NCBI GenBank assembly: GCA_002269645.1
Contig: NIVC01000462.1
Location: forward strand, 57,143 to 121,142
DNA from: Macrostomum lignano
Lineage: Eukaryota
Reading direction: 5' to 3'
Length of the DNA stretch: 64,000 bases
Shown here: piece after piece, positions 2,355 to 50,722 of the stretch
How the letters are laid out: each line of letters opens with the position of its first letter
Numbering within the stretch: the stretch's first letter is position 1
Made by a program: the position numbers and the translations under genes
Notes under the pieces: model-generated
What the model saw: the letters and a program-made list of their open reading frames with translations, nothing else
What the model was told of the DNA's origin: nothing
The model's database searches: none

Positions 2355-3191
2355 ATGCTACTCTGCAAGATTTTCCTGTGCACCGCTCCAATCCTGAGCT
2401 GCCTGATCTGCGCCGCTCTGTGCCGCCAGTTCCGGACCTCGGACCTCGGCTGCTTCGTTGACTTCGCGAATGGCAAGAGAGAAATGTCAGGCATGAAGCA
2501 CCTCGGTCTATCACGGATTGGCAGCTCCAGCGTAATACAATATGGCGAAGGTGTCATGACTGCTCTCTTCAGCAACCAGATGACTCACGAGCTGTGCGGC
2601 AGCATCTGCGCTCTGGGCGGCTTTCAGATCGCTGCTTTGCAATCGAAATCCTGGTGCTTCTGCGGCAACTCCCACGGGTCGCAGGGCGCTGCTCCTGACT
2701 GGGAGTGCAAAGACGCTTGTCGTGGAAATTCTAGCCAGAACTGCGGAGGCGACTACCGAAACAGAGTTCTTCAGATGAGCTGCACCAACGGTGAGCTGTG
2801 TTTAGCGCCTCGTTCTGTTGCTATTGGATTTTATAGAAACGCTCATAATCGCCGTATTTGCGCATTTACGAGTAAATAGCAAGTTTTACAATCATTTTGT
2901 TGCCACTGAATTCCAACACGATTCGAATTCTGCTACCGGCTTGCAGGGGACATTCTCTTCGTCCTTGGAAAACGGACCTTCGTCGAGATCAGCGTCTTTG
3001 ATGCGCTGACCCTCGAGACAGTCAGCGCTCCGGATCTCCAAGAGTGCGCGCTCTGGTGTGTTCTCAAAAGTGCCGATTGCCAGGCGGTGATCTTCAGCCA
3101 GCAGCAGCGCCTGTGCCACCTGCTGGAGTTCGCTGCGGTCCCGGCCGCGCACAACAGCACCAGCAGCGGCGACTTCTTTGTTCGTGGCTAA
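2355..3191 (+). CDS. Secreted WSC-domain + PAN/apple-domain protein, 226 aa, 2 exons
   Basis: Exons 2355-2790 and 2947-3191 (GTGAG..TTGCAG, phase 1 in frame). Hydrophobic N-terminal signal-like segment; WSC Cys pattern (LGCFVD..MTHELCGSIC..WCFCGN..CKDACRGNSSQNCGG..NRV); PAN-like pattern (ECALWC..DCQAVIF..RLCHLL); stop TAA 3189-3191. Confidence 0.8.
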
Positions 3192-4021
3192 AAGTGGAAA
3201 CAGAGCTGATGCTGGCGCAGTTAAGCACATTTACTCGACTCTATGTTATTTCCTTTTATTATTATTTGTTGTTTGGGCGTCTCAGCATAGTTTTCCAACT
3301 CAAATTCAAGTCAAACTAATGGCCCCTATTTGATGCCATACTCACAGCACAGAGCCATACTTTGTCTCCTGTGCCTCCATCCTGGTCGGCCAGTCCAGAC
3401 TCTGGCCTCTATCTCAGCCTTGCCGTCTGTCATCTTTAGCTCTTTAGATACATTACATAGCAACCAAATAGTATTCGCTTCTTAGTGTTAATCTAATTGA
3501 TCAATTTTTGTTATTCTAGGCTAACATAATGCGTCATTCGGTCTTATCGCACTGTCTGCAGAGATGTGAAAGTAAAAAAACGGAATAAATGATTATGAAA
3601 ACGTCAATTTGCACCGCGCGTATCTTTAATCACAATTAAATGTTTTTCATTTCCACTGGTGCAATAAACGAAAAAATAGGTTTTTTTGGCAAAATTCGAA
3701 GTTTGCACTTTCTACGACAGAATTCGTTGCATGGTAACCTGTGCATTTGACTGAATTGGGTCATCAGCCAAACTGAATTATATAGATTTCACCTACACAG
3801 ACATTTAATGGGAGTCCTTCATTTGTGTTTTACCATCGATATTTAGTGACAGTGGGAGTGTAATGCTTTAAATCTAATGCGGAAGTGAAAGCCATTTTGT
3901 CATAGATTTCATTTGCGCCCACTGTAAGACTTGGCTTCGTATATAAGTGCCCTAAGCAGCCTATCCATTTTGTTTACTTCACTCACAAATTCTTAAAATG
4001 GTTGTTTTTATTCTTCTTTTA

Positions 4022-4572
4022 CCGTAGTCGTCATGGCCGTACGGGCGCAACCACTCTCATGCACCTGCCTCCTCCGCCACTGCCTGTCCTTTGCTGCTCT
4101 TCTTAGCCTCTCCATTATCCATCCGGTCCATTCTTTCAAGTCATCTTCCCGCTGTCTTTTCGGTCTTTCTCTTCTTTTTTCACCTCCTACTTATTTCTTG
4201 AATACTGACAGTTGCCATGGCCCTTCCTCGGCTGAATTCGTAATATTTCATGGTTTCTCCATAGATTCTGGTTCCTTTCCCAATACCTCCTTAACTTTTC
4301 TCTAAGCCCAGGCATTTGTCTTTTTATCTTTTTCATGAAATCCTTAGCATTCTTCTGTAACATGTCATTTCAAACGCTTTGAGTGTCTTCCATACTTTTC
4401 ATACCCAGAGTCCAGCTCTCGCATTCATGCATGTAGAGCGGTATCGCCCATTTGATCGCTTTTGTGATCTTGAGGCGATTCTTCAAACCGACTCCTTTTT
4501 AGTCACCAAAGTTCATAAAGCTGTTGTGTGCCCCTTTCACGAAAACGACGCCTATGCCATCTTAACCTATTG
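4022..4572 (-). mobile_element. 5'-truncated, degenerate RTE-clade LINE 3' fragment
   Basis: Minus-strand translation with stops and frameshifts gives RTE RT C-terminal motifs: ..CESWTL.., KAFEMTCYRRMLRIS*KDKKTNAW, KRRERPKRQREDDLKEWTG, AAKDRQWR. Confidence 0.8.
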
Positions 4573-5117
4573 GGAAGCTGCGACCTCCAGGTCCCCAGCC
4601 AGAGCACCCGCCAACGGAGGCAGCGGCGGCTGCCCACTCGACAGCAGCTTCATTATGTTTTTAATTTGGCCTACGAGTACATGAATATTAAATAAGGTAA
4701 GAAAGAATGTGCGGTACGGTAGGGTGAGGTGCGAGGTGGCGTGATCAGCGTGCGCACTGGTTGAGAAAACTGGAGGGCAGGGGCAGACTGGGCGCGAGAA
4801 CAAAAAAAGGGCACTATTGCACAAGCCTTGTCATTGAGCTGGTTGCAACGCCTATTCCGATTCTGATCTCTTCCTCCTCTGATTCTGATTCTCCATGATG
4901 GTTGCCCCCCCCCCAGATTGACAGAGTGACGGATCGAGCTGAAACTTTATTTTTGCAGTGTTCTTAGTTGCACATTTTTTTCCTGTCAAACGGCGTTCTA
5001 AAAAATTTTTGCAGAGCAGAGATTTTGTTAATTTTCGAATATCAATCTGAATATCGATCGGGAAACAAATGCGTGGTATATATAGCATTTCCCGGTCAAT
5101 TTGGTCCTAGAATCACT

Positions 5118-7714
5118 CAATTTAATCCGCAATAGAGAACTCCAATTCATTCCGCCGTCACTAGAGATATGTCTATGACCAAATATGCTGTTTTTTCAAT
5201 TTAATCCGCAATAGAGAACTCCAATTCATTCCGCCGTCACTAGAGATATGTCTATGACCAAATATGCTGTTTTTTCAATTTAATCCGCAATAGAGAACTC
5301 CAATTCATTCCGCCGTCACTAGAGATATGTCTATGACCAAATATGCTGTTTTTTCAATTTAATCCGCAATAGAGAACTCCAATTCATTCCGCCGTCACTA
5401 GAGATATGTCTATGACCAAATATGCTGTTTTTCAATTTAATCCGCAATAGAGAACTCCAATTCATTCCGCCGTCACTAGAGATATGTCTATGACCAAATA
5501 TGCTGTTTTTTCAATTTAATCCGCAATAGAGAACTCCAATTCATTCCGCCGTCACTAGAGATATGTCTATGACCAAATATGCTGTTTTTTCAATTTAATC
5601 CGCAATAGAGAACTCCAATTCATTCCGCCGTCACTAGAGATATGTCTATGACCAAATATGCTGTTTTTCAATTTAATCCGCAATAGAGAACTCCAATTCA
5701 TTCCGCCGTCACTAGAGATATGTCTATGACCAAATATGCTGTTTTTTCAATTTAATCCGCAATAGAGAACTCCAATTCATTCCGCCGTCACTAGAGATAT
5801 GTCTATGACCAAATATGCTGTTTTTCAATTTAATCCGCAATAGAGAACTCCAATTCATTCCGCCGTCACTAGAGATATGTCTATGACCAAATATGCTGTT
5901 TTTTCAATTTAATCCGCAATAGAGAACTCCAATTCATTCCGCCGTCACTAGAGATATGTCTATGACCAAATATGCTGTTTTTTCAATTTAATCCGCAATA
6001 GAGAACTCCAATTCAGTCCGCCGTCACTAGAGATATGTCTATGACCAAATATGCTGTTTTTCAATTTAATCCGCAATAGAGAACTCCAATTCATTCCGCC
6101 GTCACTAGAGATATGTCTATGACCAAATATGCTGTTTTTTCAATTTAATCCGCAATAGAGAACTCCAATTCATTCCGCCGTCACTAGAGATATGTCTATG
6201 ACCAAATATGCTGTTTTTTTCAATTTAATCCGCAATAGAGAACTCCAATTCATTCCGCCGTCACTAGAGATATGTCTATGACCAAATATGCTGTTTTTTC
6301 AATTTAATCCGCAATAGAGAACTCCAATTCATTCCGCCGTCACTAGAGATATGTCTATGACCAAATATGCTGTTTTTTCAATTTAATCCGCAATAGAGAA
6401 CTCCAATTCATTCCGCCGTCACTAGAGATATGTCTATGACCAAATATGCTGTTTTTTCAATTTAATCCGCAATAGAGAACTCCAATTCATTCCGCCGTCA
6501 CTAGAGATATGTCTATGACCAAATATGCTGTTTTTTCAATTTAATCCGCAATAGAGAACTCCAATTCATTCCGCCGTCACTAGAGATATGTCTATGACCA
6601 AATATGCTGTTTTTCAATTTAATCCGCAATAGAGAACTCCAATTCATTCCGCCGTCACTAGAGATATGTCTATGACCAAATATGCTGTTTTTCAATTTAA
6701 TCCGCAATAGAGAACTCCAATTCATTCCGCCGTCACTAGAGATATGTCTATGACCAAATATGCTGTTTTTTCAATTTAATCCGCAATAGAGAACTCCAAT
6801 TCATTCCGCCGTCACTAGAGATATGTCTATGACCAAATATGCTGTTTTTTCAATTTAATCCGCAATAGAGAACTCCAATTCAGTCCGCCGTCACTAGAGA
6901 TATGTCTATGACCAAATATGCTGTTTTTCAATTTAATCCGCAATAGAGAACTCCAATTCATTCCGCCGTCACTAGAGATATGTCTATGACCAAATATGCT
7001 GTTTTTTCAATTTAATCCGCAATAGAGAACTCCAATTCATTCCGCCGTCACTAGAGATATGTCTATGACCAAATATGCTGTTTTTTTCAATTTAATCCGC
7101 AATAGAGAACTCCAATTCATTCCGCCGTCACTAGAGATATGTCTATGACCAAATATGCTGTTTTTTCAATTTAATCCGCAATAGAGAACTCCAATTCATT
7201 CCGCCGTCACTAGAGATATGTCTATGACCAAATATGCTGTTTTTTCAATTTAATCCGCAATAGAGAACTCCAATTCATTCCGCCGTCACTAGAGATATGT
7301 CTATGACCAAATATGCTGTTTTTTCAATTTAATCCGCAATAGAGAACTCCAATTCATTCCGCCGTCACTAGAGATATGTCTATGACCAAATATGCTGTTT
7401 TTTCAATTTAATCCGCAATAGAGAACTCCAATTCATTCCGCCGTCACTAGAGATATGTCTATGACCAAATATGCTGTTTTTCAATTTAATCCGCAATAGA
7501 GAACTCCAATTCATTCCGCCGTCACTAGAGATATGTCTATGACCAAATATGCTGTTTTTCAATTTAATCCGCAATAGAGAACTCCAATTCATTCCGCCGT
7601 CACTAGAGATATGTCTATGACCAAATATGCTGTTTTTTCAATTTAATCCGCAATAGAGAACTCCAATTCATTCCGCCGTCACTAGAGATATGTCTATGAC
7701 CAAATATGCTGTTT
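5118..7714. repeat. 79-bp satellite, ~33 near-identical copies
   Basis: Unit CAATTTAATCCGCAATAGAGAACTCCAATTCATTCCGCCGTCACTAGAGATATGTCTATGACCAAATATGCTG(T)5-7. Variation is almost only T-run length plus one recurrent T>G (6016, 6883). Confidence 0.97.
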
Positions 7715-8435
7715 GGTTCCACTCAATTTAATCCTGGGGGCACTTATTTCGCGTATTTATTTTAAAAGCCGTTATAATAAGCAAGAATGAGTGACTCGGA
7801 AAGTAGCGCCAGCTTTGTCACTGCTGACGGAGAAGGAAATCAGGGAAGGAAATTAAAGACCATTAAAAGCAACCATTTTGGCCATAGAAAATGAAAAGCA
7901 AGTTTTTACAAAGTAATAGCTTTATTTCCTTACTAACGATTAAAATCTTTGCTCCGAGGCTCTATTTTCTATTTAAAATGCTGTTAAATTTCGCAGACAT
8001 AGATGGTCGAATCTGCTTTTCTAATTATTGCACTGACGCAAGTTTTATTTTTATTACGTGTCGTACTAGGTACTTGCGCTGCTTCTAGAAAGTTCTGCTA
8101 GTTTCTATTTCAAGCTTTTTCTTTCGTCATTTTATTCGTTTTTCATTCGGTCTAACCAGGCCTCACTATGGTTATCTATTCAAGTATACTCGTACTTATA
8201 TTTATGAAGTTATTACTGAACAGCCTGCTGTACAGTTTCTTGTATACAGTAGCCTTGCATCTTGAGCTGTACCCACCCAGTGCGAGCCTACGTACCATAA
8301 GCAGATTGAGATATAGACCAAAACAATATAAATGCATGCATACCAGGGGTAGCATAGTTACAGAACGAATAGAAAAAATAGAAACCGAAAATAAGAAGAC
8401 AGCTGAATTTCGTCTTTGTGTTTTGTAGCCTTACA

Positions 8436-9914
8436 ATGAGTGACGATTTTCCGGAGTACCTTGACTACCTGACAGATTGTATCAACGGACTGAATTCAGG
8501 AAAGTATCGCATTCTCACGGACGGCAACTATTCAGCATCATCATTAATTGTCATTGACAATTTCGGGAAAATAAAAAACGGAAAATGCATCCCGGAATGG
8601 GTCTTCCGATTGGATAAACCGCACAAGGGCTGCAATTACAGCCATTTGAATATTAACAGCAAAATGTTTGGCATTCCAGATCCGCACACTCCAATTCCAG
8701 ATTGGATGGTTAAATATGGAAAAACGTTCGGAAAAGGCGCTAAGGTAGCAGGAAAATTATTTTCCATCGTCGGCATAGTAGCAGATATATACAATGTTTG
8801 TAAAAGCGTGGTAAAAGATTATAGAGAGAATGGATCTGTTGAGTCTGCTGTTGCTACTGGAGCAAAAACCGCCGCTCCAGTCGTCGGTTCTCGCATGGCT
8901 TGTCCAGCTGGAGCCTCAGGTGAGAGAGACTGCCAGTTATATTAATGTGAGGCACTCGCAAACTTCTACAGTGTATGTAAGTACAGGTAGCATATAGCAG
9001 TTCCCAATGATATCTAGTCGCGTAACTATTGCAATATATACATGTATGCTACTGAGCAGGCGTAAAGCGGTGCTGGCCTTTACGGATACGAGTAGCTATT
9101 ATAACAGTTCTGGCAAATTCCGAAAGAACAAAAACCAAGGCAGCAATTACCGGTTGATTTCAGTTCTAATTGTGATAGCCTAGTTTGTGCTGGCTGCTGA
9201 TATTGAGTCCGTTTATTGTTTGTATACTGGATTCTAGTCTCTTGGTAGAAATTATTTTTGTCTCTTTGCCTTTACGTCCCTCTCTACATGTATTTGAAAC
9301 AGGTTTGGTATAGTATTTGTTTTGTATTTGAACAGGTTTTCTCTCAGTTTGGTGTCAAAACACAGGCGGAGGAATTGAGCTAACTCAACCCCAGCTAAGC
9401 GTCGGCCAATAAATATACCCAAAAAACCGACCCAAACAAAATGGAGAGAGAAAAACAGGGCAAAAGGCACAGCCAATCAGCGCGGCCCGCAGGGCAGAGC
9501 TGACAAACCATGGAAGGGGCAGAGCCACGCACGGCTGAAAGAAATGAGAGAGAAAGAGAGCTTACAGTTAACCTATCACCCTACAGCGCAGGCGATCACG
9601 ATGGGGTGGGGCCTATAATGCTCGCACCGGGGAACACGGCATCCAACCCCCTCCCCCCCCTCCAACCAGTCGGTACATCGTTTGGAGTGGCCGGCCCAAA
9701 GCGCAAAATTAAAGACAAATAAATGTATGACAGAAAAATTTTACTATTGAGCAAGCAATCAATCCTTAGTGACCAACCTGATCTCATTTTAACAGCTGGA
9801 GCGGTAATTGGCACTGCCATACTACCTGGTGTTGGCACCGTTGTTGGAAGCATCTGTGGCTCTCTTTTGGCGACATTCGCTGCTGACGAAATAGTGCACA
9901 AATCGGTTCACTAG
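8436..9914 (+). CDS. Uncharacterised 200-aa protein with His-rich motif, amphipathic helix and C-terminal glycine zipper (copy 1), 2 exons
   Basis: Exons 8436-8919 (donor CAG|GTGAGA) and 9796-9914 (acceptor TTAACAG), phase 1 in frame. Motif RLDKPHKGCNYSHLNINSKMFGIPDPH is conserved in the paralog. C-terminus GASAGAVIGTAILPGVGTVVGSICGSLLATFAADEIVHKSVH*. No signal peptide. Confidence 0.75.
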
Positions 9915-11152
9915 TTCTCTGACTAACTACTAAAGTTCTGTACTGGAGAATGAAGTTGCTCGATGTAGACTGCGATTTCATGATTGGATTCGATTCTGAA
10001 ATGCACCCAGCAGCATGTTAAAGTTTCCACGCCAAAACCAGTGGTCAACTTTCCTCAGATCTCAGCCCCAAGTGACACAATTCACACCACGTCCGCGGGC
10101 TCGTATGAGCTGATCAAGCTGATATGAAGAGAAATAAACTGATACTAGTGCATTACCAATTGAGAATATTAGGAATTAGTTTGTTATTTATTTATCAAAT
10201 CTCCACTTACATTGTTTGAATCATTATCGCAAAAACAGACTTTTTTATTTTTGGGTGGAAACTTTAACATGTTGCTGAGTGTATATTAAGTAGTTTACAT
10301 ATGTAATATTTATGTATATAGTAATGCCCTGTGTCTACCAAAAATTTACCAATGTCTTTGTTTAAAACACACTTCTCTTAGATTGTGTTTACATGTACCG
10401 TACATTAAGTGCTATTTATATCCCCACAAGTAGAAATCGATACTTTATAGCAATAGAAAATTAACGCAAGAAGGAAACCCGAGGTTAATGAGGGATCGAA
10501 ATATGAGCAGTGCTGTAGCATCGGCCTAGATAGATTAGCTCCAGTCTCATCTGGAACCAAATGTAAAAATATAAAATAGAGATTTTGGCCTCTAAAATCC
10601 TCAGAATCCGGCTCTGCGGTGGTGCAGGACCGTCTACGGAAACTGTATGTAGTTCTTACCGGTGGTTGTACTTTGGCTCCGGCATTACGAGTAACTGTGA
10701 CTGTCCTTCTTGGGAACTACAAGATACAATGACGTTGCACAGTCGAAAGTCCTTGAAAGTCGAATTTGTTTTTCTAAATTTTGCAGTGACGCGAGTTTTC
10801 ATTATTTTTATCACGAGCGTACGTGCGTATTACGCATTAGGTACTTGTGCTGCTTCCAGAAAGTTCTGCTATTTTATATTTCAATCTTTTTCTTTCGTCT
10901 CCGTGTTAATTCTGTCTGACCAGGCCTTGCTGCCCAAATCTATCCAAGTACACTGCAGAAGACTCCCGCATCTCGATCAGTACCTGCAAACGTACTGAAC
11001 CGATGTACTTACCGAAGTATCGAAGTACCGAATATCTAAATAGTATAAATATATAAAGGATGCAAAACGAATAGAATAATTAGAAACGAAAAATAAGGAG
11101 ACAGCTAGGTGAGTTTCGTTTTTTTGTATTTCGTGTTCGACGTGGCCTCAGA

Positions 11153-11833
11153 ATGAGTGACGACAACAGTCCTGAGTACCTTGACTACCTGACAGATATC
11201 ATCAACGGACTTGATTCTGGGAAATATCGCGTTGTCACGGACGGCCACACTTCGACATTTATAGTCATCGACATGTTCGGGAAAATAAAAAACAGAAAAT
11301 ACATCCCGGAATGGGTCTTCCAATCGGATAAAGCGCATAAGGGCTGCAACTACTCCCATTTGAATATTAACAGCAAAATGTTTGGCATCCCAGATCCGCA
11401 CACTCAAATTCCAGATTGGATGGTTAACAATGGAACGATGTTTGGAAAAGGCGCTAAGAAAGCAGGAAAATTCTTAAACATATTTGGAATAGCTGTAGAT
11501 GCAGCCAATGTTGGTAAAAGCATGACAAAAGATTATAGAGAGAATGGATCCGTTACATCTGCTTTTGCTAATGGAATGAAAGCCGCTGTTCCAATTGGCG
11601 CCTCTCGCCTGGCTGGTGCAACTGCATGGAGCCTCAGGTGAGTGAGACTGCTAAATTCTATGAATGTGTGCTATTGGGACTTTTGTCTTGTTTTATCGGC
11701 TACACAATTAATATATATGGCAGAAAATGTTGCCGTTGAGCTCAGGGACAAAACCTAATCTCCTTCAACAGCTGGGGCGGCAATCGGGACTGCCATGCTA
11801 CCCGGTGTTGGCACCGTTGTTAGAAGCGTCTGA
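11153..11833 (+). pseudogene. Paralog (copy 2) of the glycine-zipper protein, truncated or pseudogenising
   Basis: Exon 11153-11637 is clearly homologous to copy 1, but a 4-nt insertion before the donor shifts the phase. Exon 2 (from 11772; AGAAIGTAMLPGVGTVVRSV*) has an internal deletion relative to copy 1. Confidence 0.65.
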
Positions 11834-14009
11834 CCAAGCAGCGCACAAATTTGTTGACTGGTTGACTGGCTAACTAAAGTTCTGTACTGGAGAATGAAGT
11901 TGTGCGATGTCTGCGATTTACCCCATAATAGGAAATTCATCCATAGACTGACTGCGAAATCAGAATTTAATGTAACATGCGTCACTGAATAGATAACCAT
12001 TCTTATTCAACCCTTTCGTTGCTTTTTGAATTTTGACAAAATGATTGTTTCTTCGTAATCTAATGGGATTCAGTTTTTCTAAAAATTGATTCACTAATTT
12101 ACAAATGTAATTTAATTGCTAACCCCGCTTAAACCGCCATTGTCTACCAGAATTTATTAATATCAACGCTTTTTATTAGCTTGCATTTCTAGTTCATTAG
12201 TATACTAATAAACAACACTAATTGGTATATAGTGTTGCCCCACTACATGCATATAATCTGGAAACTTCTTACGCTCTCCATTATGCCGAAAATTGTAACA
12301 TTTTAGAAGCTTCCTTCGAGCACAAAAAGAAACACCCTACTGTACTATCTCTCACTCGTTCTGATTACTACTGCGCCCCAAACTAACTACTCCTCGCTAC
12401 CGAGCACTCTGTTGACTTGGTTCCTACCGATAACAGGGTTCTCTGTTCGTTCAATTACCATAGATACAACAGTTCATATGTATCGTAGGTGCCAGTTATA
12501 TTCCCCCACTATAGTAGAAATCGGACTTTAGCAACAGAAAAGTAACAAGGATGGGAAACTGGCGGTTTATCAGGGAAATACGAGCAATGCCTCGGCTCTT
12601 CAGTCTCATCAGGAACCCTATTATGAACAGAGATTTTGTCCGCTAAAATCTTCAGAATCCATGCAGTTCTTTGGTGCAGGAGACCGACAATTGACCTCCA
12701 GATTTCACTTGGAATGCAACGGCGGTCAAATTGTCTGGCGGTTAAATTGTGGCGGTCCAATCGGCGTAGACCCCGATCTAGTTCAGTCTCAGTACCATAT
12801 AGTTTCAATTCCCAGCTTCATCGGGCGGTAATTTGCTTATACACCAGGCGCTTCTAAGCCAGCGCCGTACACGCAGAAACTATCTCGGTCTCTCTCCCCT
12901 GTACCGCCTCCGGTGAAGCTGTACTTCAGTCTATTACCTACTATATAACATATATATATACCTTGATGGCTTTTGCCCTTTTTTCTTCTCCCTGGATGTG
13001 TTAACGATCTATTTAGCTGTAATATTATTCGAAAGTAAACGTAATTTCTGTCTGCAGGATTTTTCTTGACTGTGTAATCTTTTTAAAATTTATCCTGGCT
13101 TTCTTCGTTCTAAGTAATTAAAAACTCCCTAGCTGCCTTTGGCAGTAAAAGCATATGAAAGCTGGAAGGCTGCAAGAAAGAGTGTGAGGTTTGTGAGGTG
13201 TGTATAAGTGTGTAAAGTGTGTCATGATGTGTGTGAGGTGTGTGTATTGAGGGAAGATCAGCAGGGGGAGAGGGGGTCGTCCTGCAGCAACGCCAGAGCT
13301 GGTTGGAAACTCTGCAATGGGTCCATATCCATCGGATATTTGGGCGCAGGCCATGGAACTGCTGTGCATGTCCATGACTTCCCGCTCAAGCAGCAGGCCA
13401 AGCCTTTAACGCGGCAGGAGGCGGGCTTACGCAGGTTTCAATGATGATTCTGATTGCCACCACCTGCTCTCAGTAGTTGACCTGTCACTCTGTGAGGCTA
13501 GCATGCGCACGTTGAGCCCTAGTAGCAGGTAGTTTCGCAGCACGTCGTTCAGAAAATTTTTGAGAGTGCACTTCGAGGGCGATCCCGCGCTGGCTGATGG
13601 AGTTTGTCTTTATTGGGGATGGAGATGATCTTTGAGATCTTCTATACTGCATGGCGGCAGATGTGGACTCGTCACCACCAAGACAGCAGTGGCGGTTGAG
13701 CAGTCTGATCAAAGAAGATCAGGCAACTTCAGAACTCTCGGTCGGATTCCGTCAACTCCAGACGCAGCGTCAGGGGGGCAATATAGAAGGATTGGGTGTC
13801 AGGCCGGGTGTCAGGCCGGGTGTCAGGCCGGAGGCTGGTGGGAGAAGCAGACGAGGCTCGAGCGCGTTCAACACCAGCTAGTAGTGCGAGGCTACCAGCT
13901 GCTTTCGATTTTCCTGTGACTTGGCAGCGACGATTGTGTTGGGCTTCTCTCTGCGACCGCTCAGCCTGTTGATGGAGCGCTAGCTATGCTGTCAGTTCAC
14001 AGTCAGTTG

Positions 14010-25300: not shown

Positions 25301-28300
25301 GAGCAGATTCAGTAGGGTAGACAGCAGATTCCGGAGGGCAGAGAGCAGATTCAGTAGTGAGTAGGGTAGAGAGCAGATTCAGTAGGGTAGAGAGCAGATT
25401 CAGTAGGGTAGAGAACAGATTCAGTAGGGTAGAGAGCAGATTCAGTAGGGTAGACAGCAGATTCAGTAGGGTAGAGAACAGATTTAGGAGGGTAGAGAGC
25501 AGATTCAGTAGGGTAGACAGCAGATTTAGGAGGGTAGACAGCAGATTCAGGAGGGTAGACAGCAGATTCAGTAGGGTAGAGAACATATTCAGGGGGCAGA
25601 GAGCAGATTCAATCCGCACTGCAATGCCGCACCCCGCAGGCAAGCGAGGAGGCGGCCGCCGCCGCAGCCCCGACCGCAGCGGCGCCCTCAGTCGGCGGCG
25701 ACGTGGCGCTGCTGGCCGAGGCGGGTGACGGAGGCGGCTGCGCCTCAGGCAGCGGCCCGCGGCCATTCGACAAGGCTAAGGAGGCCCTGGAGGACCTGGT
25801 GATGCGAGCCAATTACAACAACATGAACTGCATAGTGGACCCGGTGCTGACCCACCTGGACCACAATCCAGACCTGTGGGCGCCCAACCGGTTCGCCGTG
25901 TTCGTATTCCACACCATCATCTGCCGCATCCCCAAGCCGTCCCAGGCCTACGCTGTGGTGGACCGGGTCATCCAGCACCTCAACACGGTCAAGTCCACCC
26001 CGGTGAAGAAGGCAGTTGTCCAGGTTGTCAGCAGCATTGTGGGCTACGCTGCCAGCGATGCTATTGGGCCGGCCGTGTACAATGTGTTCAAGGAGCTGTG
26101 CAGGCAGCTCATGCAGAGCATCTGGTCCAGGGATGAGAGCAGCGATGTGAGTTTAGGTTGGGTTTCCACGCTTGGGATAAGACATCGACTCATTCACTGA
26201 TCCTCAGTTGCTGGGCCAGCCTCCCAGATCCTCATTTGCTGGGCCAGCCTCCCAGATCCTCTGTTGCTGGGCCAGCCTTCCAGATCCTCAGTTGCTGGGC
26301 CAGCCTTCCAGATCCTCGGTTGCTGGGCCAGCCTCCCAGATCCTCAGTTGCTGGGCCATCCTCCCAGATCCTCAGTTGCTGGGCCAGCCTTCCAGATCCT
26401 CGGTTGCTGGGCCAGCCTCCCAGATCCTCAGTTGCTGGGCCAGCCTCCCAGATCCTCAGTTGCTGGGCCAGCCTCCCAGATCCTCAGTTGCTGGGCCAGC
26501 CTCCCAGATCCTCGGTTGCTGGGCCAGCCTCCCAGATCCTCAGTTGCTGGGCCAGCCTCCCAGATCCTCAGTTGCTGGGCCAGCCTCCCAGATCCTCAGT
26601 TGCTGGGCCAGCCTCCCAGATCCTCGGTTGCTGGGCCAGCCTCCCAGATCCTCGGTTGCTGGGCCAGCCTCCCAGATCCTCAGTTGCTGGGCCAGCCTCC
26701 CAGATCCTCAGTTGCTGGGCCAGCCTCCCAGATTCCAAATTTGGAAGTGACCCCACACGTGACCGCCGCTTGCCACCTCAGGTGGAGTCGCAGTACCGCG
26801 AGGAGGTCATCAACACGATGGTCCGCTACTCGGAGGCTTCGCCCGACACGCAGAAAGTGGAGATTATGAAGTACATTCTGTCCTTCGAGGCGCAGCACGT
26901 TCGCATGCTGGACCAGAGCTCGCAGTCGCAGCCGGAGGTGGAGGAGCGCAAGCGCAAGATGCTGCTGAAGAGCCTGCTCAAGACTGTTAGCATGGTTGCT
27001 GAGAACTATCGCACCACGGTGATCTCCAACGCTTTCCCATTTGATTTCCTGCCTCCCCTGCTGAAGATCTCTATGAATAGCGATCCCGGCATCCGGGTTG
27101 TGGTGCAGAACATCTTGCAGCACCTCATCGATAGGCACTCTTATCGGGAGGCCTTCAGCCGGGTGCGCCTACTGCCGTTGCCCGACAGCTCGACAGGTGC
27201 GCCGTCACCGCGGCACGACAAGCCGTCTCGGCAGGACATGCAGTTCATGCGGTCCGCCATGGGCAGTGAGCTGCTCACCCACCTGTACACCCAGCTACAG
27301 GTGAGAACTGCGCGGTTGTTATTCAAGTAATAATCATCTAGTAAAAAGTCTAAATTAATCTAATGATATCCGTCTCTAAGATTTTCCCTTGGGGGGGGGG
27401 CGTGGAGGTGTCGCAGCCCAGTGGTCCAGCACGGATCTCTGATGTACCAACGGCCCAGGCTCGATTCCAAGTTGTCAGTCACATTAATTGGAATCTCGGC
27501 TTGGCTCTGCTCGTGCCCAGAGCACAGTAAATTGTACATACGAAACGATAAAGTTTATAGTGCGTATATGTGCGTATGACTGCGTACGTATCCGCGCGCT
27601 TGTGTGCCTGCTCAGGGGAGTCGGCGGAATGGGCATCAATGCCTCTCGCCTCTTGTGTGGCGATGTCGCTTAAAATGTGCCAGGGTGCCTCTAATAAAAA
27701 AAATCTATCCTGAAAATCGTCTCTGTATCTTTCTTGAGAATCGTCTCTTGATCTCACATGAGAGTTGTGGGATCTCATTAGATCTCATATGAAAATCGTC
27801 TCTAGATCTCACATGAGAATCGTTTCTAGATCTCACATGAGAATTGTCTTTAGGTCTGACCTAAGAATCGTTTCTAGACCTTACCTGAGAATAGTCTCTT
27901 GATCTCACCTGAGAATCGTCTCTAGATCTCACCTGAGAATCGTCTCTAGTTCTCACCTGAGAATCGTCTCTAGATCTCACCTGAGAATTGTCTCTAGATC
28001 TCACCTGAGAATCGTCTTTAGATCTCACCTGAAAATCGTCTATAGATCTCACCTGAAAATGGTCTCAAAATAGCCCCATTATGCCGTAATGCGAACGCCC
28101 CTCAGACTGAGCAGCTTGCTTCCATCCCGCAGGAGGAGAGCAACCGGGTGGACAACTTCGAGAAGCTGTACACCACCCTGTGCCTGCTGGCGCTGGAGAC
28201 TGCGGCAGATGAAGCTCTGGTTGAGTTCTTCCGCCTCGGCCTGCAGACTCAGGACTTTCTAGTCAGCGATCGGTGCGGCCTGAAGATTGTGCACAAGTCT

Positions 28301-28619
28301 GCCGCCATGGCGGTTGTGGCCGCCCTCTTCACCCTGCTGTGCGGCCTGCAGCCTTGCAAAGGCATCGACGCTCACGTGGCCGAGGTCGGAATTTATTCGA
28401 TTTTTACAGAATATAGCAATCATGCACTTTGTGTGCTACTTATTTAGCTACTGGGCAGTAGAATGCCTAAACTCTATATATTTAATTCCGCTAAATGCAC
28501 GCAGGTGATTGAGCAGCGAAACAGCAAAGCGCCGCATTTTCTGCCTAAAGTGGCTTTCAATAGGAATAATACAGCTAAGAGGTGAGTCCGACTTGCTTTC
28601 TAGTGTCTGTCTTAGTGGC

Positions 28620-28682
<63 letters not shown>

Positions 28683-28683
28683 G

Positions 28684-28730
<47 letters not shown>

Positions 28731-28731
28731 G

Positions 28732-28798
<67 letters not shown>

Positions 28799-28816
28799 GT
28801 GTCTGTCTGTCTGTCA

Positions 28817-28870
<54 letters not shown>

Positions 28871-28871
28871 G

Positions 28872-28910
<39 letters not shown>

Positions 28911-28952
28911 GTGTCTGTCTGTCTGTCTGTCTGTGTGTCTGTCTGTCTGTCA

Positions 28953-29006
<54 letters not shown>

Positions 29007-29007
29007 G

Positions 29008-29046
<39 letters not shown>

Positions 29047-29047
29047 G

Positions 29048-29086
<39 letters not shown>

Positions 29087-29104
29087 GTGTCTGTCTGTCT
29101 GTCA

Positions 29105-29174
<70 letters not shown>

Positions 29175-29175
29175 G

Positions 29176-29230
<55 letters not shown>

Positions 29231-29231
29231 G

Positions 29232-29290
<59 letters not shown>

Positions 29291-29291
29291 G

Positions 29292-29340
<49 letters not shown>

Positions 29341-32300
29341 GACTACACCCTGTATGCCATCACACTGTCCATCGCGCAGCTACGCCACCGAGTCCATCAC
29401 TCCTGAGCTGCTGTTCTCAACCGACCAGATCGAATCCGAGCTGAAGGCGGCCGGCTTCGACACCAGCACCCTGCGGCAGCCATACGAGTCGCTGATGGAC
29501 CTGCGTGCTAAGCTAGGTGACGAGATAAACGCATCGAACAGAGGTGAGGCCATGGTCAGAGCTTGGTTTAAACAAATTGACTGTAATACTTTGCTGCAAT
29601 TTAAGTTTGTCTGTTTGTTTTTATAAATTCGCTAGTAAAATGATACATTTACATGTAAATACAAGAGTGCAAATAAATATTAACGCCCGAACACTCGGCT
29701 ATCTGGTCTACTAGGCGGATTTGTTGGATTCGGCAGGCAGCAGCCAAAGCGAAGGGAGTCAACATTTCACTGTAAATAATATCTGCGTATGCGTTTTGGC
29801 CGTCCTGATTCGATGGCTCAATAATATCAATGTGTTTCAATATATGGCCATTGTAGTTTCATAAATTTAAATCTTTCTCAAAACTTTGGCGTATTGATTC
29901 ATTCAAATCAGTAATTGCTGCCAGATAGATTGGTTGCGGGCCAGTTCCTTATCCATCAGTGTACTCTTATAGCTTAGCGAAATTTATACATTGTTCCCTC
30001 TCAATGTACACTCTGCCTGCCCCCACCAACCCATAGACCCTCTGCCTCTCTCCCCAATGTACACATTGCCTGCCCCTTCCAACCCATAGACCCTCTGCCT
30101 CTCTCCCCAATGTACACTTTGCCTGCCCCTTCAACCCATAGACCCTCTGCCTCTCTCCCCAATGTACACTTTGCCTGCCCCTTCCAACCCATAGACCCTC
30201 TGCCTCTCTCCCCAATGTACATATTGCCTGCCCCCTTCAACCCAAAGACCCTCTGCCTCTCTCCCCAATTTACACATTGCCTGCCCCCTCTAACCCATAG
30301 ACCCTCTGCCTCTCTCCCCAATGTACACATTGCCTGCCCCCACCAACCCATAGACCCTCTGCCTTTCTCCCCAATGTACACATTGCCTGCCCCTTCCAAC
30401 CCATAGACCCTCTGACTCTCTCCCCAATGTACACTTTGCCTGCCCCTTCAACCCATAGACCCTCTGCCTCTCTCCCCAATGTACACTTTGCCTGCCCCTT
30501 CCAACCCATAGACCCTCTGCCTCTCTCCCCAATGTACATATTGCCTGCCCCCTTCAACCCAAAGACCCTCTGCCTCTCTCCCCAATTTACACATTGCCTG
30601 CCCCCTCTAACCCATAGACCCTCTGCCTCTCTCCCCAATGTACACATTGCCTGCCCCACCAACCCATAGACCCTCTGCCTCTCTCCCCAATGTACACATT
30701 GCCTGCCCCCTCCAACCCATAGACCCTCTGCCTCTCTCCCCAATGTACACTTTGCCTGCCCCCTCTAACCCATAGACCCTCTGCCTCTCTCCCCAATGTA
30801 CACATTGCCTGCCCCCTCCAACCCATAGACCCTCTGCCTCTCTCCCCAATGTGCACATTGCTTGCCCCTCCAACCCATAGACCCTCTGCCTCTCTCCCCA
30901 ATGTACACATTGCCTGCCCCCTCCAACCCATAGACCCTCTGCCTCTCTCCCCAATCAATTTATTATTGATTTCGTTCTGCATGTAGGAATACTCTTTTGG
31001 GTGTTAAATCTATTATTGACTAATTGTTTCAATCTCTGACATTAATTGGTTTAAGTGAGTAGATTTATGATTTTTTCGAGTTTTTTCATCTCACCTAAAG
31101 TTTAATAATGATTAACAGTAAAATGAATACTTTTTTCTGTACAGTACTTGTTCTTAAGAAAATTTATCTCTGCTTAAATTTGATTCTCACAACTTCCATT
31201 ATCATTCCCATTGTCCCCACAGATTGGGTTGTAGTGACGGAGTGTTCCTATATTATGGGGGGGGGGCTGGCTTCAAATCCTTTTCATTTATCTGTGCAAT
31301 TCGATGTATGAAATATTAATATTAACAATAATTAACCACACAGCGATTATTCACCTATAGAGTCAATAATAATTGTTATTTCACTAATAATTTCTATCAC
31401 TCTTTTTGCCGGATTTTTTAAAGTCAAGTGAAATAAAATAATTTGCGCATTCGCACATTTCATTTTAGCAGTAGTACTAGTAGTAGTGCGATATAGGTTA
31501 TCAAACATTTTGTTATAATTTATTTTTCATTATAAATCCTTTGTTTTAGTTCGTAAGTATGAGGCACCCGGTTGAATCCGGTTGAGTGGTCAGTTTGATA
31601 AACGGCAGATCATTGATTAGATTAATTTGTTATAACTATTTTAACTAACCACATTAACACGTGTTTTTAACCACTAACATTTGCGTAGCATATGATGTTA
31701 TAGTTATTATTTATTTATTTCATTGCATTTGCTTTTATTTGTTAACTTAAGTTTTGGTTTTTAACTTCTGCAGTTTTTGCATGCCCAGTGAGCTCTGCAT
31801 CTCTGCTTTTCTCTTTGTCTCCCTTTCCGCCTCTTGTGTACCTCTACCTCCACCTCCTATCTACCTCTCCACCTATCTCCTTCTTTAACTCTCCTATCTG
31901 TTTCTCTCCTCTCCTGTCTCCCTCTCTGCCTCTCCTATCTTATCTACCTCTCCTCCCACCTCTTCTATGTACCTCTCCCTTCCCCAATTTCCACCCTCTC
32001 TCTAGATCCTCTCTTCTTTATCTCATCCTCTCCCTCACTTTTTCCCATATCTCCTTCCCTTTCCCACTCTAATCTATTTTATCCCTCTCTTTCATGGCTC
32101 TCACCAAGTTATTGATCACCGGTAAAAAGATAGTGTATAAAGTTATTATCGATACATATCGGGTGAATCAACTTTAGTACTATCTAGCGGCTCAATTTGC
32201 ACGAGGATCTTCGACTGCCTTTAGGATTAGAAAAAAGTGCAATGCTAAAAAATCAGCCATTCCTTTCTCATCCAAGCTTACTAACGCAACCAATAGCTAA

Positions 32301-50559: not shown

Positions 50560-50722
50560 GCTTCTTCTCAAACTCGCGCGTCGACATCGCGCGTCGACAT
50601 GTGTGATGCTTCTTCCGCGGACGTATGCGATATCGTAGTCGAAAGCGGCCAGTTGGATCGCCCACCGCGTGATTCTCGCCGACGGGACATTCTTGATCTC
50701 CTTGGCTAGGCTGGAGGACAAA
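50560..50722 (-). mobile_element. Gypsy pol fragment (C-terminus of RNase H)
   Basis: KEIKNVPSARITRWAIQLAAFDYDIAYVRGRSITHVDA matches the RI.RW.L.L..FDY.I.Y..G..N..AD motif; a 13-bp tandem duplication (50575-50600) disrupts the end. Confidence 0.8.

What the first reader, a model, noticed from the sequence alone, without database searches (positions are those of the whole stretch)
8436..11833. Tandem family of unnamed His-motif + glycine-zipper proteins: candidate toxin or pore-forming effectors
Seen: two diverged paralogs keep the block W-V-F-x-x-D-K-x-H-K-G-C-N-Y-S-H-L-N-I-N-S-K-M-F-G-I-P-D-P-H-T-x-I-P-D-W-M-V almost invariant while the flanks drift, which implies selection. An amphipathic helix (GKTFGKGAKVAGKLFSIVGIVADIYNV) and a GxxxG glycine zipper (GASAGAVIGTAILPGVGTVVGSICGSLL) follow; there is no signal peptide. 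Established: glycine zippers mediate membrane insertion and oligomerisation in bacterial toxins and effectors, and clustered D/H residues often bind metal. Inference: a cytosolic membrane-targeting effector family, possibly of bacterial origin and now intron-bearing, expanding by tandem duplication. I cannot assign it to a named family from sequence alone.
Basis: partly seen in the sequence, partly recalled or inferred. Interest (0 to 1): 0.72.

Follow-up and report, generated by a model that had tools for sequence, protein, structure and literature searches.

The report
Toxin-derived glycine-zipper genes in flatworm
The window (flatworm Macrostomum lignano) holds one intact and one decaying copy of a small gene whose whole protein matches the killing end of bacterial contact-dependent "polymorphic" toxins, a module that animals from nematodes to mayflies also carry as their own intron-bearing genes and that nobody has named or tested.

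Summary
Gene 1 (8436-8919 + 9796-9914) encodes the annotated 200-aa protein BOX15_Mlig019912g1 with the His/Asp block, a cationic amphipathic helix and a glycine zipper, and no signal peptide. Gene 2 (11153-11833) keeps the block, but its zipper exon is out of frame and cut short, so it is probably a pseudogene. The family is not flatworm-specific. A profile search finds 236 relatives. In bacteria the same module is the C-terminal cassette of RHS/DUF6443, Bfe1-type T6SS and WXG-type toxins, followed by a conserved small soluble immunity-type gene. In animals (Caenorhabditis, Panagrolaimus, mites, mayflies, a sawfly, Fasciola) it forms stand-alone "C13G5.2-like" genes, often in tandem clusters. 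A phase-1 intron sits within one codon of the same site in flatworm and nematode genes, which argues for an old animal acquisition rather than a recent transfer. No Pfam, NCBIfam, PDB or Foldseek match covers the His-motif part. The best reading is a domesticated membrane-permeabilising toxin module. The rival is an enzymatic head with the zipper as a translocation device. A side lead is that the central helix of a bacterial subfamily resembles the moth peptide moricin.

The parts
8436..8919 (+). Gene 1 (BOX15_Mlig019912g1) exon 1, codons 1-161 plus the first base of codon 162
   Evidence: ATG at 8436 and donor CAG|GTGAGA after 8919. The spliced translation equals P0001 at 100% over 200 aa.
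8598..8711 (+). Conserved His/Asp-motif block W55-V92 (R58, D60, H63, H70, N72, H84)
   Evidence: 34/38 identical between the two copies. dN/dS is 0.24-0.42. D60, H70, N72 and H84 are invariant, and R58 and H63 are at least 90% conserved, in 43 relatives. The AF2 model has pLDDT 82-95 here, with beta strands 34-47, 50-60 and 70-73.
8718..8798 (+). Cationic amphipathic helix G95-V121
   Evidence: Helix 89-132 in the AF2 model. Net charge +2 to +4 and hydrophobic moment 1.2-1.8. It aligns with the segment of bacterial members that hits Pfam Moricin and PDB moricins.
8920..9795 (+). Gene 1 intron (876 bp, phase 1), with a unique GC-rich stretch at about 9380-9720
   Evidence: GT..AG borders. The intron is 134 bp in copy 2 and about 231 bp in L001. 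It has no other copy in the window or in L001.
9796..9914 (+). Gene 1 exon 2: glycine-zipper hairpin (the zipper runs 8910-8919 + 9796-9875) and stop TAG 9912-9914
   Evidence: G163, G167, G175 and G179 are invariant, and G173 and G183 at least 90% conserved, in relatives. KD19 hydropathy is 1.4-1.8 over residues 153-195. Pfam Gly-zipper hits have E about 0.02 but fall below the cut-off.
11153..11637 (+). Gene 2 exon 1 (485 nt), with an intact His-motif block and a frameshift near its 3' end
   Evidence: 73% protein identity to gene 1. A 2-nt insertion relative to copy 1 lies just before the donor.
11638..11771 (+). Gene 2 intron remnant (134 bp)
   Evidence: Homologous donor CAG|GTGAGT and acceptor CAACAG|.
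11772..11833 (+). Gene 2 exon 2 remnant with a truncated zipper
   Evidence: With the homologous donor it is out of frame (stop at 11821-11823). The zipper frame ends ..PGVGTVVRSV* at 11831-11833. A weak alternative donor at 11615 would restore the frame, but the product still lacks G179 and G183.
10720..12812 (+). About 2.1-kb duplicated segment that carries gene 2 and is absent from the paralogous locus L001
   Evidence: The window flanks 10327-10720 and 12812-13000 are adjacent in L001 (10984-11371 and 11438-11619). Upstream homology between copy 1 and copy 2 is shown.

Best explanation
Gene 1 is a flatworm member of an unnamed three-part protein module. The parts are a small beta-rich head with an invariant Asp/His/Asn constellation (about residues 20-92), a cationic amphipathic helix (93-132) and a glycine-zipper helical hairpin (157-199). 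Shown: in bacteria this whole module is the exchangeable C-terminal toxin cassette of polymorphic toxins. These include RHS/DUF6443 proteins of Bacteroidota, a Bfe1-type T6SS effector and WXG-type proteins of Chloroflexota and Firmicutes-like genomes. In the five Bacteroidota and Chloroflexota loci examined, a conserved small soluble immunity-type gene follows directly. Shown: animals (nematodes, mites, mayflies, a sawfly, flukes, Macrostomum) carry it as stand-alone genes without signal peptides. These genes contain introns, are often tandemly amplified and evolve fast outside the His block. Inferred: the module works by inserting the zipper hairpin, helped by the amphipathic helix, into a target membrane. 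There it oligomerises through GxxxG packing and dissipates ion gradients, as shown experimentally for other glycine-zipper toxins (EsxX, TelE, TspA, Tse4). Inferred: the His/Asp head is a metal-stabilised accessory domain that keeps the hydrophobic tail soluble or gates its insertion. Inferred: the flatworm uses the domesticated module as a defence or antimicrobial effector. Gene 2 is a decaying tandem duplicate.
For: Identity and gene model. Family size: 236 hits at E<=1e-3 and 63 at E<=1e-10, covering profile positions about 20-188 and mostly at the C-terminus of the hit. Bacterial architecture: DUF6443 plus RHS in P0028 and P0142; a 2167-aa RHS protein in L006 and RHS-core ends in L004 and L005; a Bfe1 T6SS N-terminus in P0006; a WXG-like N-terminus in L009; orphan RHS cassettes on a Hymenobacter plasmid. 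Immunity-type gene: a soluble 145-186 aa ORF directly downstream in L004, L005, L006, L009 and L013, mutually homologous (blastp 2e-21 to 7e-6; profile E 1.3e-20). Animal members. The nearest neighbours of the Macrostomum proteins are animal sequences. Shared intron: phase 1, within one codon, in M. lignano and in five C. remanei paralogs. Tandem cluster of at least 7 paralogs in C. remanei. Selection pattern. Zipper glycines invariant. Hydrophobic hairpin and amphipathic helix. Functional precedent for glycine-zipper toxins: PMC12744356 and the abstracts listed.
Against: There is no experiment on any member; no paper was found for C13G5.2 or the Mlig gene ids. Pfam Gly-zipper scores are below the gathering cut-offs (15 bits against 25). 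The AF2 confidence for the C-terminal helices is only 50-75. Candidate immunity proteins are soluble, without TM segments. The head keeps invariant D, H and N residues in bacteria and animals alike. Both features are more typical of enzymatic toxins than of pure pore formers. Without a signal peptide, it is unexplained how an animal protein would reach microbes. H63 is replaced in some bacterial and nematode members, so a simple catalytic or metal role for it is uncertain.
Confidence: 0.55

Rival explanations
1. The His/Asp head is the toxic part, a small metal-dependent enzyme such as a nuclease or other hydrolase. The glycine zipper and amphipathic helix only carry it across the target membrane, as the N-terminal glycine zipper does for the T6SS DNase Tde1.
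For: D60, H70, N72 and H84 are invariant, and R58, H63, D117 and D128 are at least 90% conserved, from bacteria to animals, with purifying selection on the block. Candidate immunity proteins are soluble cytoplasmic proteins. Precedent: a zipper needed for translocation of Tde1 (PMC10240207, abstract).
Against: No sequence or fold match to any enzyme family was found: Pfam, NCBIfam and PDB profile searches, and Foldseek against PDB and BFVD. The head is only about 70 residues. H63 is Asp, Thr or Gln in several members, including immunity-linked bacterial ones. EsxX, a pure depolariser, also has a soluble immunity pair that binds its zipper.
Confidence: 0.22
2. In animals the module has lost toxicity and is an ordinary intracellular membrane or lipid-droplet protein. 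The zipper acts as a membrane anchor and the head as an interaction domain.
For: There is no signal peptide. Some nematode paralogs are fused to apolipoprotein-like or repetitive amphipathic N-terminal regions. There is a weak Tim23-like hit (E 0.015).
Against: The Tim23 score is 14.8 bits against a cut-off of 181.7. dN/dS is at or above 1 in the helical part, and the genes show rapid tandem birth and death and a patchy distribution across animals. These patterns are typical of conflict or immune genes, not housekeeping ones.
Confidence: 0.13
3. The animal genes are selfish toxin genes (toxin-antidote type elements) acting within the species rather than against microbes.
For: The genes encode intracellular toxin-like proteins in fast-evolving tandem clusters with pseudogenised copies, in Caenorhabditis and Macrostomum.
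Against: No antidote candidate is present. No homolog of the bacterial immunity family is found in the window or in L001. No genetic data exist. The family is conserved across phyla with a shared intron, which is unusual for short-lived selfish elements.
Confidence: 0.05
4. The genes are bacterial contamination or a very recent Macrostomum-specific horizontal transfer.
For: Identity to the Bacteroidales protein P0006 is 38% over 91% of the length, the best non-flatworm BLASTP match.
Against: The genes have spliceosomal introns and eukaryotic flanks rich in minisatellites, and a paralog sits on a second contig. They cluster with animal sequences. The intron position is shared with nematodes.
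Confidence: 0.02

Closest known systems
Glycine-zipper membrane-depolarising polymorphic toxins (EsxX and TelE of T7SSb; also TspA, Tse4, Ssp6)
   Same: They are C-terminal toxin cassettes of secreted polymorphic toxins and have an extended GxxxG zipper close to the C-terminus. Toxicity comes from membrane depolarisation. EsxX has soluble immunity proteins that bind the zipper (PMC12744356; PMC10434224).
   Different: No sequence relationship was shown here, and no His/Asp head has been described for those toxins. The immunity-type family found here has no Pfam or NCBIfam match. Animal homologs are not reported in the EsxX paper (0 occurrences of 'eukaryot').
Rhs pore-forming toxin Tse5-CT (P. 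aeruginosa T6SS)
   Same: It is an RHS-encapsulated C-terminal toxin that inserts into membranes and collapses the membrane potential (PMC9637101 and PMC10684867). It has the same kind of carrier as P0028, P0142 and L006.
   Different: It belongs to a different toxin family. The profile search of PDB, which holds the Tse5 structure, gave no hit.
Tde1 (Ntox15 DNase with a glycine zipper used for translocation)
   Same: It combines a His-containing catalytic head with a glycine zipper that permeabilises the target membrane (PMC10240207).
   Different: Its zipper is N-terminal to the nuclease. There is no sequence match to Ntox15, and the only Ntox hit is a chance-level Ntox24 hit (E 0.008 in 3 of 103 members).
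Moricin (Pfam PF06451), a 42-residue helical antimicrobial peptide of Lepidoptera
   Same: The central helix of a bacterial subfamily (P0075, P0059, P0127) aligns with nearly the whole mature peptide. The Pfam score is 27.2 bits (E 3.4e-6). Moricins 1kv4 and 1x22 are the top two of 177,635 PDB sequences (E 0.012 and 0.019). None of 20,000 shuffles reaches the real score.
   Different: Moricin is a secreted stand-alone peptide with a signal peptide. The scores are just under Pfam's cut-off (27.6). The flatworm protein itself does not hit moricin (E 0.3 in a 151-sequence search). The family's near-invariant Asp (D117) is Thr in moricin.
Other animal genes derived from bacterial polymorphic-toxin domains (teneurins, AID/APOBEC-like deaminases, ADP-ribosyl cyclases)
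   Same: They show the same evolutionary theme: a toxin cassette taken up by animals and kept as an endogenous gene (PMC3482391 and other papers listed).
   Different: This particular module was not found in that catalogue. Its text lists only Tox-WTIP as a pore-forming domain, and the term search found no Caenorhabditis mention.

Membership tests
Unnamed bacterial polymorphic-toxin C-terminal module (His/Asp head + helix + Gly zipper) | Significant whole-domain sequence similarity | tested here: met
   The profile of the three flatworm sequences hits 63 proteins at E<=1e-10 over profile positions about 20-188. BLASTP to P0006 gives 38% identity over 91% of the query.
Unnamed bacterial polymorphic-toxin C-terminal module (His/Asp head + helix + Gly zipper) | Position at the extreme C-terminus of a trafficking or repeat protein (RHS, T6SS, T7SS) | tested here: not met
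   This is met for the bacterial relatives. The flatworm protein is the bare module with no carrier. It is a homolog of the toxin domain, not a polymorphic toxin.
Unnamed bacterial polymorphic-toxin C-terminal module (His/Asp head + helix + Gly zipper) | Cognate immunity gene immediately downstream | tested here: not met
   A conserved immunity-type ORF is present in five bacterial loci. tblastn finds no homolog in the window or in L001.
Animal 'C13G5.2-like' glycine-zipper family | Clusters with animal members and shares gene structure | tested here: met
   The nearest clade holds C. tropicalis, C. brenneri, Cloeon, Mesorhabditis and Oppiella sequences, but the tree is star-like. A phase-1 intron lies within one codon of the site in five C. 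remanei paralogs.
Pfam glycine-zipper families (PF13488 Gly-zipper_Omp, PF05433 Rick_17kDa_Anti) | Score above Pfam's gathering cut-off | tested here: not met
   The scores are 15.3 and 15.2 bits against cut-offs of 25 and 24.2.
Pfam glycine-zipper families (PF13488 Gly-zipper_Omp, PF05433 Rick_17kDa_Anti) | Repeated GxxxG pattern in a hydrophobic helix | tested here: met
   The pattern G163-x3-G167 and G175-x3-G179-x3-G183 is conserved in relatives, and the segment is hydrophobic.
Pfam glycine-zipper families (PF13488 Gly-zipper_Omp, PF05433 Rick_17kDa_Anti) | Membrane insertion and oligomerisation | not testable with these tools
   This needs liposome, bilayer or in-vivo depolarisation assays.
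Moricin (PF06451) | Pfam score above the cut-off; a secreted peptide of about 42 aa with a signal peptide | tested here: not met
   The flatworm protein has no Moricin hit. The best bacterial member scores 27.2 against 27.6. The architecture differs.
HNH / His-Me finger nucleases | Beta-beta-alpha metal fold with a catalytic His, detectable by profile or fold search | tested here: inconclusive
   There was no Pfam or PDB profile hit and no Foldseek hit at E<0.001. Only the full-length model could be searched, and its floppy helices lower sensitivity.
Tim17/22/23 translocase subunits | NCBIfam TIGR00983 score above the cut-off | tested here: not met
   The score is 14.8 bits against a cut-off of 181.7.

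The most novel reading that the evidence does not exclude
This module is an ancient, still unnamed class of animal immune effector. It was captured once from bacterial polymorphic toxins before flatworms and nematodes diverged. Its central helix is the evolutionary source, directly or through a second bacterial transfer, of the lepidopteran antimicrobial peptide moricin. The His/Asp head is a new metal-dependent fold that gates membrane insertion.
Probability: 0.2. Interest if true: 0.8.

Novelty: new variant of a known kind. Interest (0 to 1): 0.6.

Why it matters
The finding defines a toxin module that no curated library covers: the His/Asp head has no Pfam, NCBIfam or PDB match. The module links bacterial warfare systems (RHS, T6SS and T7SS cassettes with a new immunity-type family) to a fast-evolving, tandemly amplified gene family in at least three animal phyla. 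That gives a testable case of toxin domestication in genetically tractable animals (C. elegans C13G5.2-like genes, M. lignano RNAi). It also suggests a possible origin for moricin, whose ancestry outside Lepidoptera is unknown to me. For annotation, the intact genes should be labelled polymorphic-toxin-like glycine-zipper proteins, and copy 2 should be flagged as a likely pseudogene.

Tried and rejected
Single-sequence searches (Pfam, NCBIfam, PDB) gave only sub-threshold glycine-zipper and Tim23 hits.

The word-indexed search of 5.8 billion proteins found only the two flatworm proteins. Repeating it with alignments A3 and A4 returned few members. The exhaustive profile search was what opened the family.

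AF2 with three sequences was useless (pLDDT 34). With 43 sequences it gave a confident head. Foldseek against PDB and BFVD then found nothing at E<0.001, and weak E2-like and PT7 hits were discarded.

Profile searches of PDB with A3 and A4 returned only chance hits (IL-6 receptor, TRIM33, a tape-measure glycine zipper).

The genome scan with the broad alignment failed because it had no conserved 7-mer. It was repeated with a close bacterial subset.

The NJ tree is star-like, with distances of about 0.70-0.73 to everything, so no donor lineage can be named.

Literature searches for the Mlig gene ids and C13G5.2 found nothing relevant. The 2012 polymorphic-toxin catalogue does not appear to list this module.

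No phage carries the moricin-like subfamily. P0165 (mite) could not be located for an intron check.

I rejected the idea that the immunity-type gene was co-transferred. I also rejected a transposable-element origin for the 876-bp intron, which has no other copy.
Full report
**What is in the window**

The window is genomic DNA of the free-living flatworm Macrostomum lignano. The spliced product of 8436-8919 + 9796-9914 is 100% identical over 200 residues to the annotated protein BOX15_Mlig019912g1. Gene 1 has two exons, a phase-1 intron of 876 bp with GT..AG borders, and a TAG stop at 9912-9914. Its N-terminus (MSDDFPEYLDYL...) is acidic, so there is no signal peptide.

- the block W55..V92;
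- the helix GKTFGKGAKVAGKLFSIVGIVADIYNV, residues 95-121;
- the zipper GASAGAVIGTAILPGVGTVVGSICGSLL, which spans the intron.

**The second copy**

Gene 2 starts at 11153 and is 73% identical in protein over exon 1. The block is kept at 34 of 38 residues. Exon 1 is 485 nt rather than 484, because of a 2-nt insertion just before the donor. The homologous donor at 11637 therefore reads exon 2 out of frame, giving the tail SWGGNRDCHATRCWHRC*. A weak upstream donor (CTG|GTGCAA, after 11615) would restore the frame. Even then a deletion ends the zipper at ..PGVGTVVRSV* (11831-11833), and the second zipper helix is lost. No protein for this copy exists in the 5.8-billion-protein collection.

Gene 2 sits in a 2.1-kb segment (about 10720-12812) that is absent from the paralogous locus L001, which carries the third paralog P0002 at 67% identity. 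So the window holds one intact gene and one decaying tandem duplicate.

**Selection**

Nei-Gojobori dN/dS among the three flatworm copies:

| Region | dN/dS |
|---|---|
| Whole of exon 1 | 0.6-0.8 |
| Block, residues 53-92 | 0.24-0.42 |
| Helical region, residues 93-161 | 1.04-1.5 |

The rest of the protein evolves at or above the neutral rate, as conflict genes often do.

One oddity remains unexplained. The 800 bp upstream of gene 1 are about 96% identical to L001. The coding exon is about 83% identical, with dS about 0.25, and the change is sharp near the ATG. Gene conversion of the flank, or a mosaic origin of the coding sequence, could cause this.

**The family**

Single-sequence searches gave nothing above threshold. 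An exhaustive profile search of 1.84 billion representatives found 236 relatives at E<=1e-3 and 63 at E<=1e-10. The match covers almost the whole protein and usually lies at the C-terminus of the hit.

In a 43-sequence alignment:
- D60, H70, N72, H84, G163, G167, G175 and G179 are invariant;
- R58, H63, D117, D128, G151, G155, G173 and G183 are at least 90% conserved.

No Pfam or NCBIfam model covers the His/Asp part in any member tested. No PDB sequence matches.

**Structure prediction**

AF2 with the 43-sequence alignment gives a confident head. pLDDT is 82-95 for residues 30-100, with beta strands at 24-28, 34-47, 50-60 and 70-73. Long helices follow at 89-132, 135-153, 157-170 and 174-199, with lower confidence. 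Foldseek against PDB and BFVD finds nothing at E<0.001.

**Bacterial members**

- P0028 and P0142 carry DUF6443 plus RHS repeats, with this module in the toxin position.
- L006 (a Cyclobacteriaceae MAG) encodes a 2167-aa RHS protein that ends in the module.
- L004 (Chitinophaga japonensis) and L005 (Flavobacterium cyanobacteriorum) show the RHS-core end followed by the module.
- P0006 has the N-terminus of Bfe1-type T6SS effectors.
- L009 (Caldilineaceae) has a WXG-like N-terminus.
- P0041 sits next to DUF4176 and arrays of paralogous small ORFs, a T7SS-type layout.
- On a Hymenobacter plasmid the module is one of several orphan "RHS repeat-associated core" cassettes. A neighbouring cassette is paired with a known SMI1/KNR4 immunity gene.

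In L004, L005, L006, L009 and L013 the next ORF (145-186 aa, no TM segment) belongs to one conserved family. Support is blastp 2e-21 to 7e-6 and profile E 1.3e-20. This family has no Pfam or NCBIfam match. I read it as the cognate immunity protein.

The scan found members in Bacteroidota, Alphaproteobacteria, Acidobacteriota and Chloroflexota.

**Animal members**

Named members come from:
- Caenorhabditis brenneri, C. remanei and C. tropicalis;
- Panagrolaimus and Mesorhabditis;
- the mites Dermatophagoides and Oppiella;
- the mayflies Ephemera, Neocloeon and Cloeon;
- the sawfly Athalia;
- the fluke Fasciola hepatica.

NCBI names the insect proteins "uncharacterized protein C13G5.2-like", so C. 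elegans C13G5.2 is a member. I found no paper on it.

In a neighbour-joining tree the Macrostomum proteins fall among animal sequences, but the tree is star-like.

A 12.6-kb stretch of C. remanei holds at least seven paralogs, and one is fused to an apolipoprotein-like region.

The C. remanei gene for P0171 has a 52-bp phase-1 intron splitting the Gly codon nine residues before PG.GT. Four neighbouring paralogs have a phase-1 intron in the same codon. The flatworm genes have a phase-1 intron ten residues before PGVGT, which is the same phase and within one codon. An unidentified eukaryote (L012), whose motif is the closest to the flatworm's, also has a phase-1 intron just before its hydrophobic tail.

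A shared intron argues that the animal genes descend from one intron-bearing ancestor. That ancestor is older than the flatworm-nematode split, or the genes moved between animals. It argues against a recent bacterial transfer into Macrostomum. The direction, bacteria to animals, is inferred from the bacterial diversity and the toxin-immunity context. It is not proven.

**Mechanism**

Nothing here measures function.

The best-supported inference is membrane permeabilisation. The C-terminal hairpin is hydrophobic and has invariant GxxxG spacing. The preceding helix is cationic and amphipathic. Glycine-zipper cassettes of T7SS and T6SS toxins depolarise membranes in experiments (PMC12744356; abstracts).

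Two facts keep an enzymatic head in play. The D/H/N constellation is invariant from bacteria to animals. The immunity-type proteins are soluble. Tde1 shows that a zipper can serve merely to translocate a nuclease (PMC10240207). Against that, no enzyme family matches. H63 is replaced in several members, including immunity-linked bacterial ones. EsxX, a pure depolariser, also has soluble immunity proteins.

I put 0.55 on the membrane-toxin reading, with the head as a metal-stabilised accessory domain. I put 0.22 on the enzymatic-head reading. The rest goes to a detoxified housekeeping role or a selfish toxin.

**Side lead: moricin**

In a bacterial subfamily (P0075, P0059, P0127, P0098, P0022; P0110 begins inside an RHS core) the central helix matches Pfam Moricin over nearly the whole mature peptide. 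The scores are 27.2 bits (E 3.4e-6; cut-off 27.6), 23 bits and 18 bits.

A profile of that helix ranks the moricins 1kv4 and 1x22 first and second among 177,635 PDB sequences, at E 0.012 and 0.019. A single-sequence search also finds the third moricin, 2jr8. None of 20,000 composition-matched shuffles reaches the real score.

The flatworm helix itself does not hit moricin. Convergence between amphipathic helices is not excluded. The later tests used the tool's own PDB sequences.

**Comparison with what is known, and verdict**

The genes work like, and are homologous to, polymorphic-toxin cassettes. They are not polymorphic toxins themselves, because they have no carrier and no immunity gene.

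They join teneurins, deaminases and ADP-ribosyl cyclases as animal genes related to such cassettes (papers). This module is not in the 2012 catalogue as far as the text search shows.

I rate it a new variant of a known kind, with interest 0.6.

Noticed in passing
window 7638-8435 against L001 9204-10000, compared with the coding exon 8436-8919: The upstream flank is about 96% identical between the two paralogous loci. The coding exon is only about 83% identical (dS about 0.25), with a sharp change near the ATG. Gene conversion of the flank or a mosaic coding sequence could explain it, but it remains unexplained.
   Followed up: partly
window 5117-7714: A 79-bp satellite of 33 copies at 99% identity ends just upstream of gene 1. 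A single unit sits at the matching place in L001 (9204-9300).
   Followed up: partly
bacterial proteins P0075, P0059, P0127 (central helix); PDB 1kv4, 1x22, 2jr8: The central helix of a bacterial subfamily of this toxin module resembles the lepidopteran antimicrobial peptide moricin. The Pfam score is 27.2 bits, just under the cut-off. Moricins are the top PDB hits, and none of 20,000 shuffles reaches the real score. It may be the evolutionary source of moricin, or it may be convergence.
   Followed up: partly
L004 6550-7056, L005 6561-7013, L006 6537-7037, L009 6468-7028, L013 3627-4118: A conserved family of small soluble proteins (145-186 aa, motif ..C.DDG..Y.[YW].N..) is encoded directly downstream of the toxin cassette in four Bacteroidota and one Chloroflexota locus. 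It has no Pfam or NCBIfam match and is a candidate new immunity family.
   Followed up: partly
L010 (C. remanei CM021146.1 99226-111841): At least seven paralogs of the family lie on both strands within 12.6 kb. One of them (3186-5379, 523 aa) is fused to an apolipoprotein-like N-terminal region.
   Followed up: partly
P0004, P0008, P0011; L012 about 740-1000: Several animal members carry an extra C-terminal tail with CxxC...CxxC spacing, which looks like a small zinc ribbon. The flatworm genes lack it. In L012 the glycine zipper is replaced by a plain hydrophobic segment.
   Followed up: no
window 9380-9720 (inside the gene 1 intron): A GC-rich stretch (52-60% GC) makes this intron 876 bp, against 134 bp in copy 2 and about 231 bp in L001. 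It has no other copy in the window or in L001.
   Followed up: partly
window 2355-2879 (+): An ORF of 174 aa has a hydrophobic N-terminus and a WSC carbohydrate-binding domain (Pfam E 1e-12). It is probably an exon of a secreted protein gene.
   Followed up: partly
window 43448-43963 (+): This is an exon encoding part of a Suf / CstF-77 type HAT-repeat protein (Pfam Suf E 2e-57). Long 19-23-bp minisatellites flank it on both sides.
   Followed up: partly
window 23900-59300: More than twenty separate minisatellite arrays are present, with units of 4, 19, 21, 22, 23, 24, 27, 28, 41, 53, 55 and 68 bp. Examples are (TGTC)n at 28604-29341 and a 22-bp array spanning 50712-55573. Many produce long spurious ORFs, and coding-looking exons at 25703-27330 lie between 28-bp arrays.
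   Followed up: no
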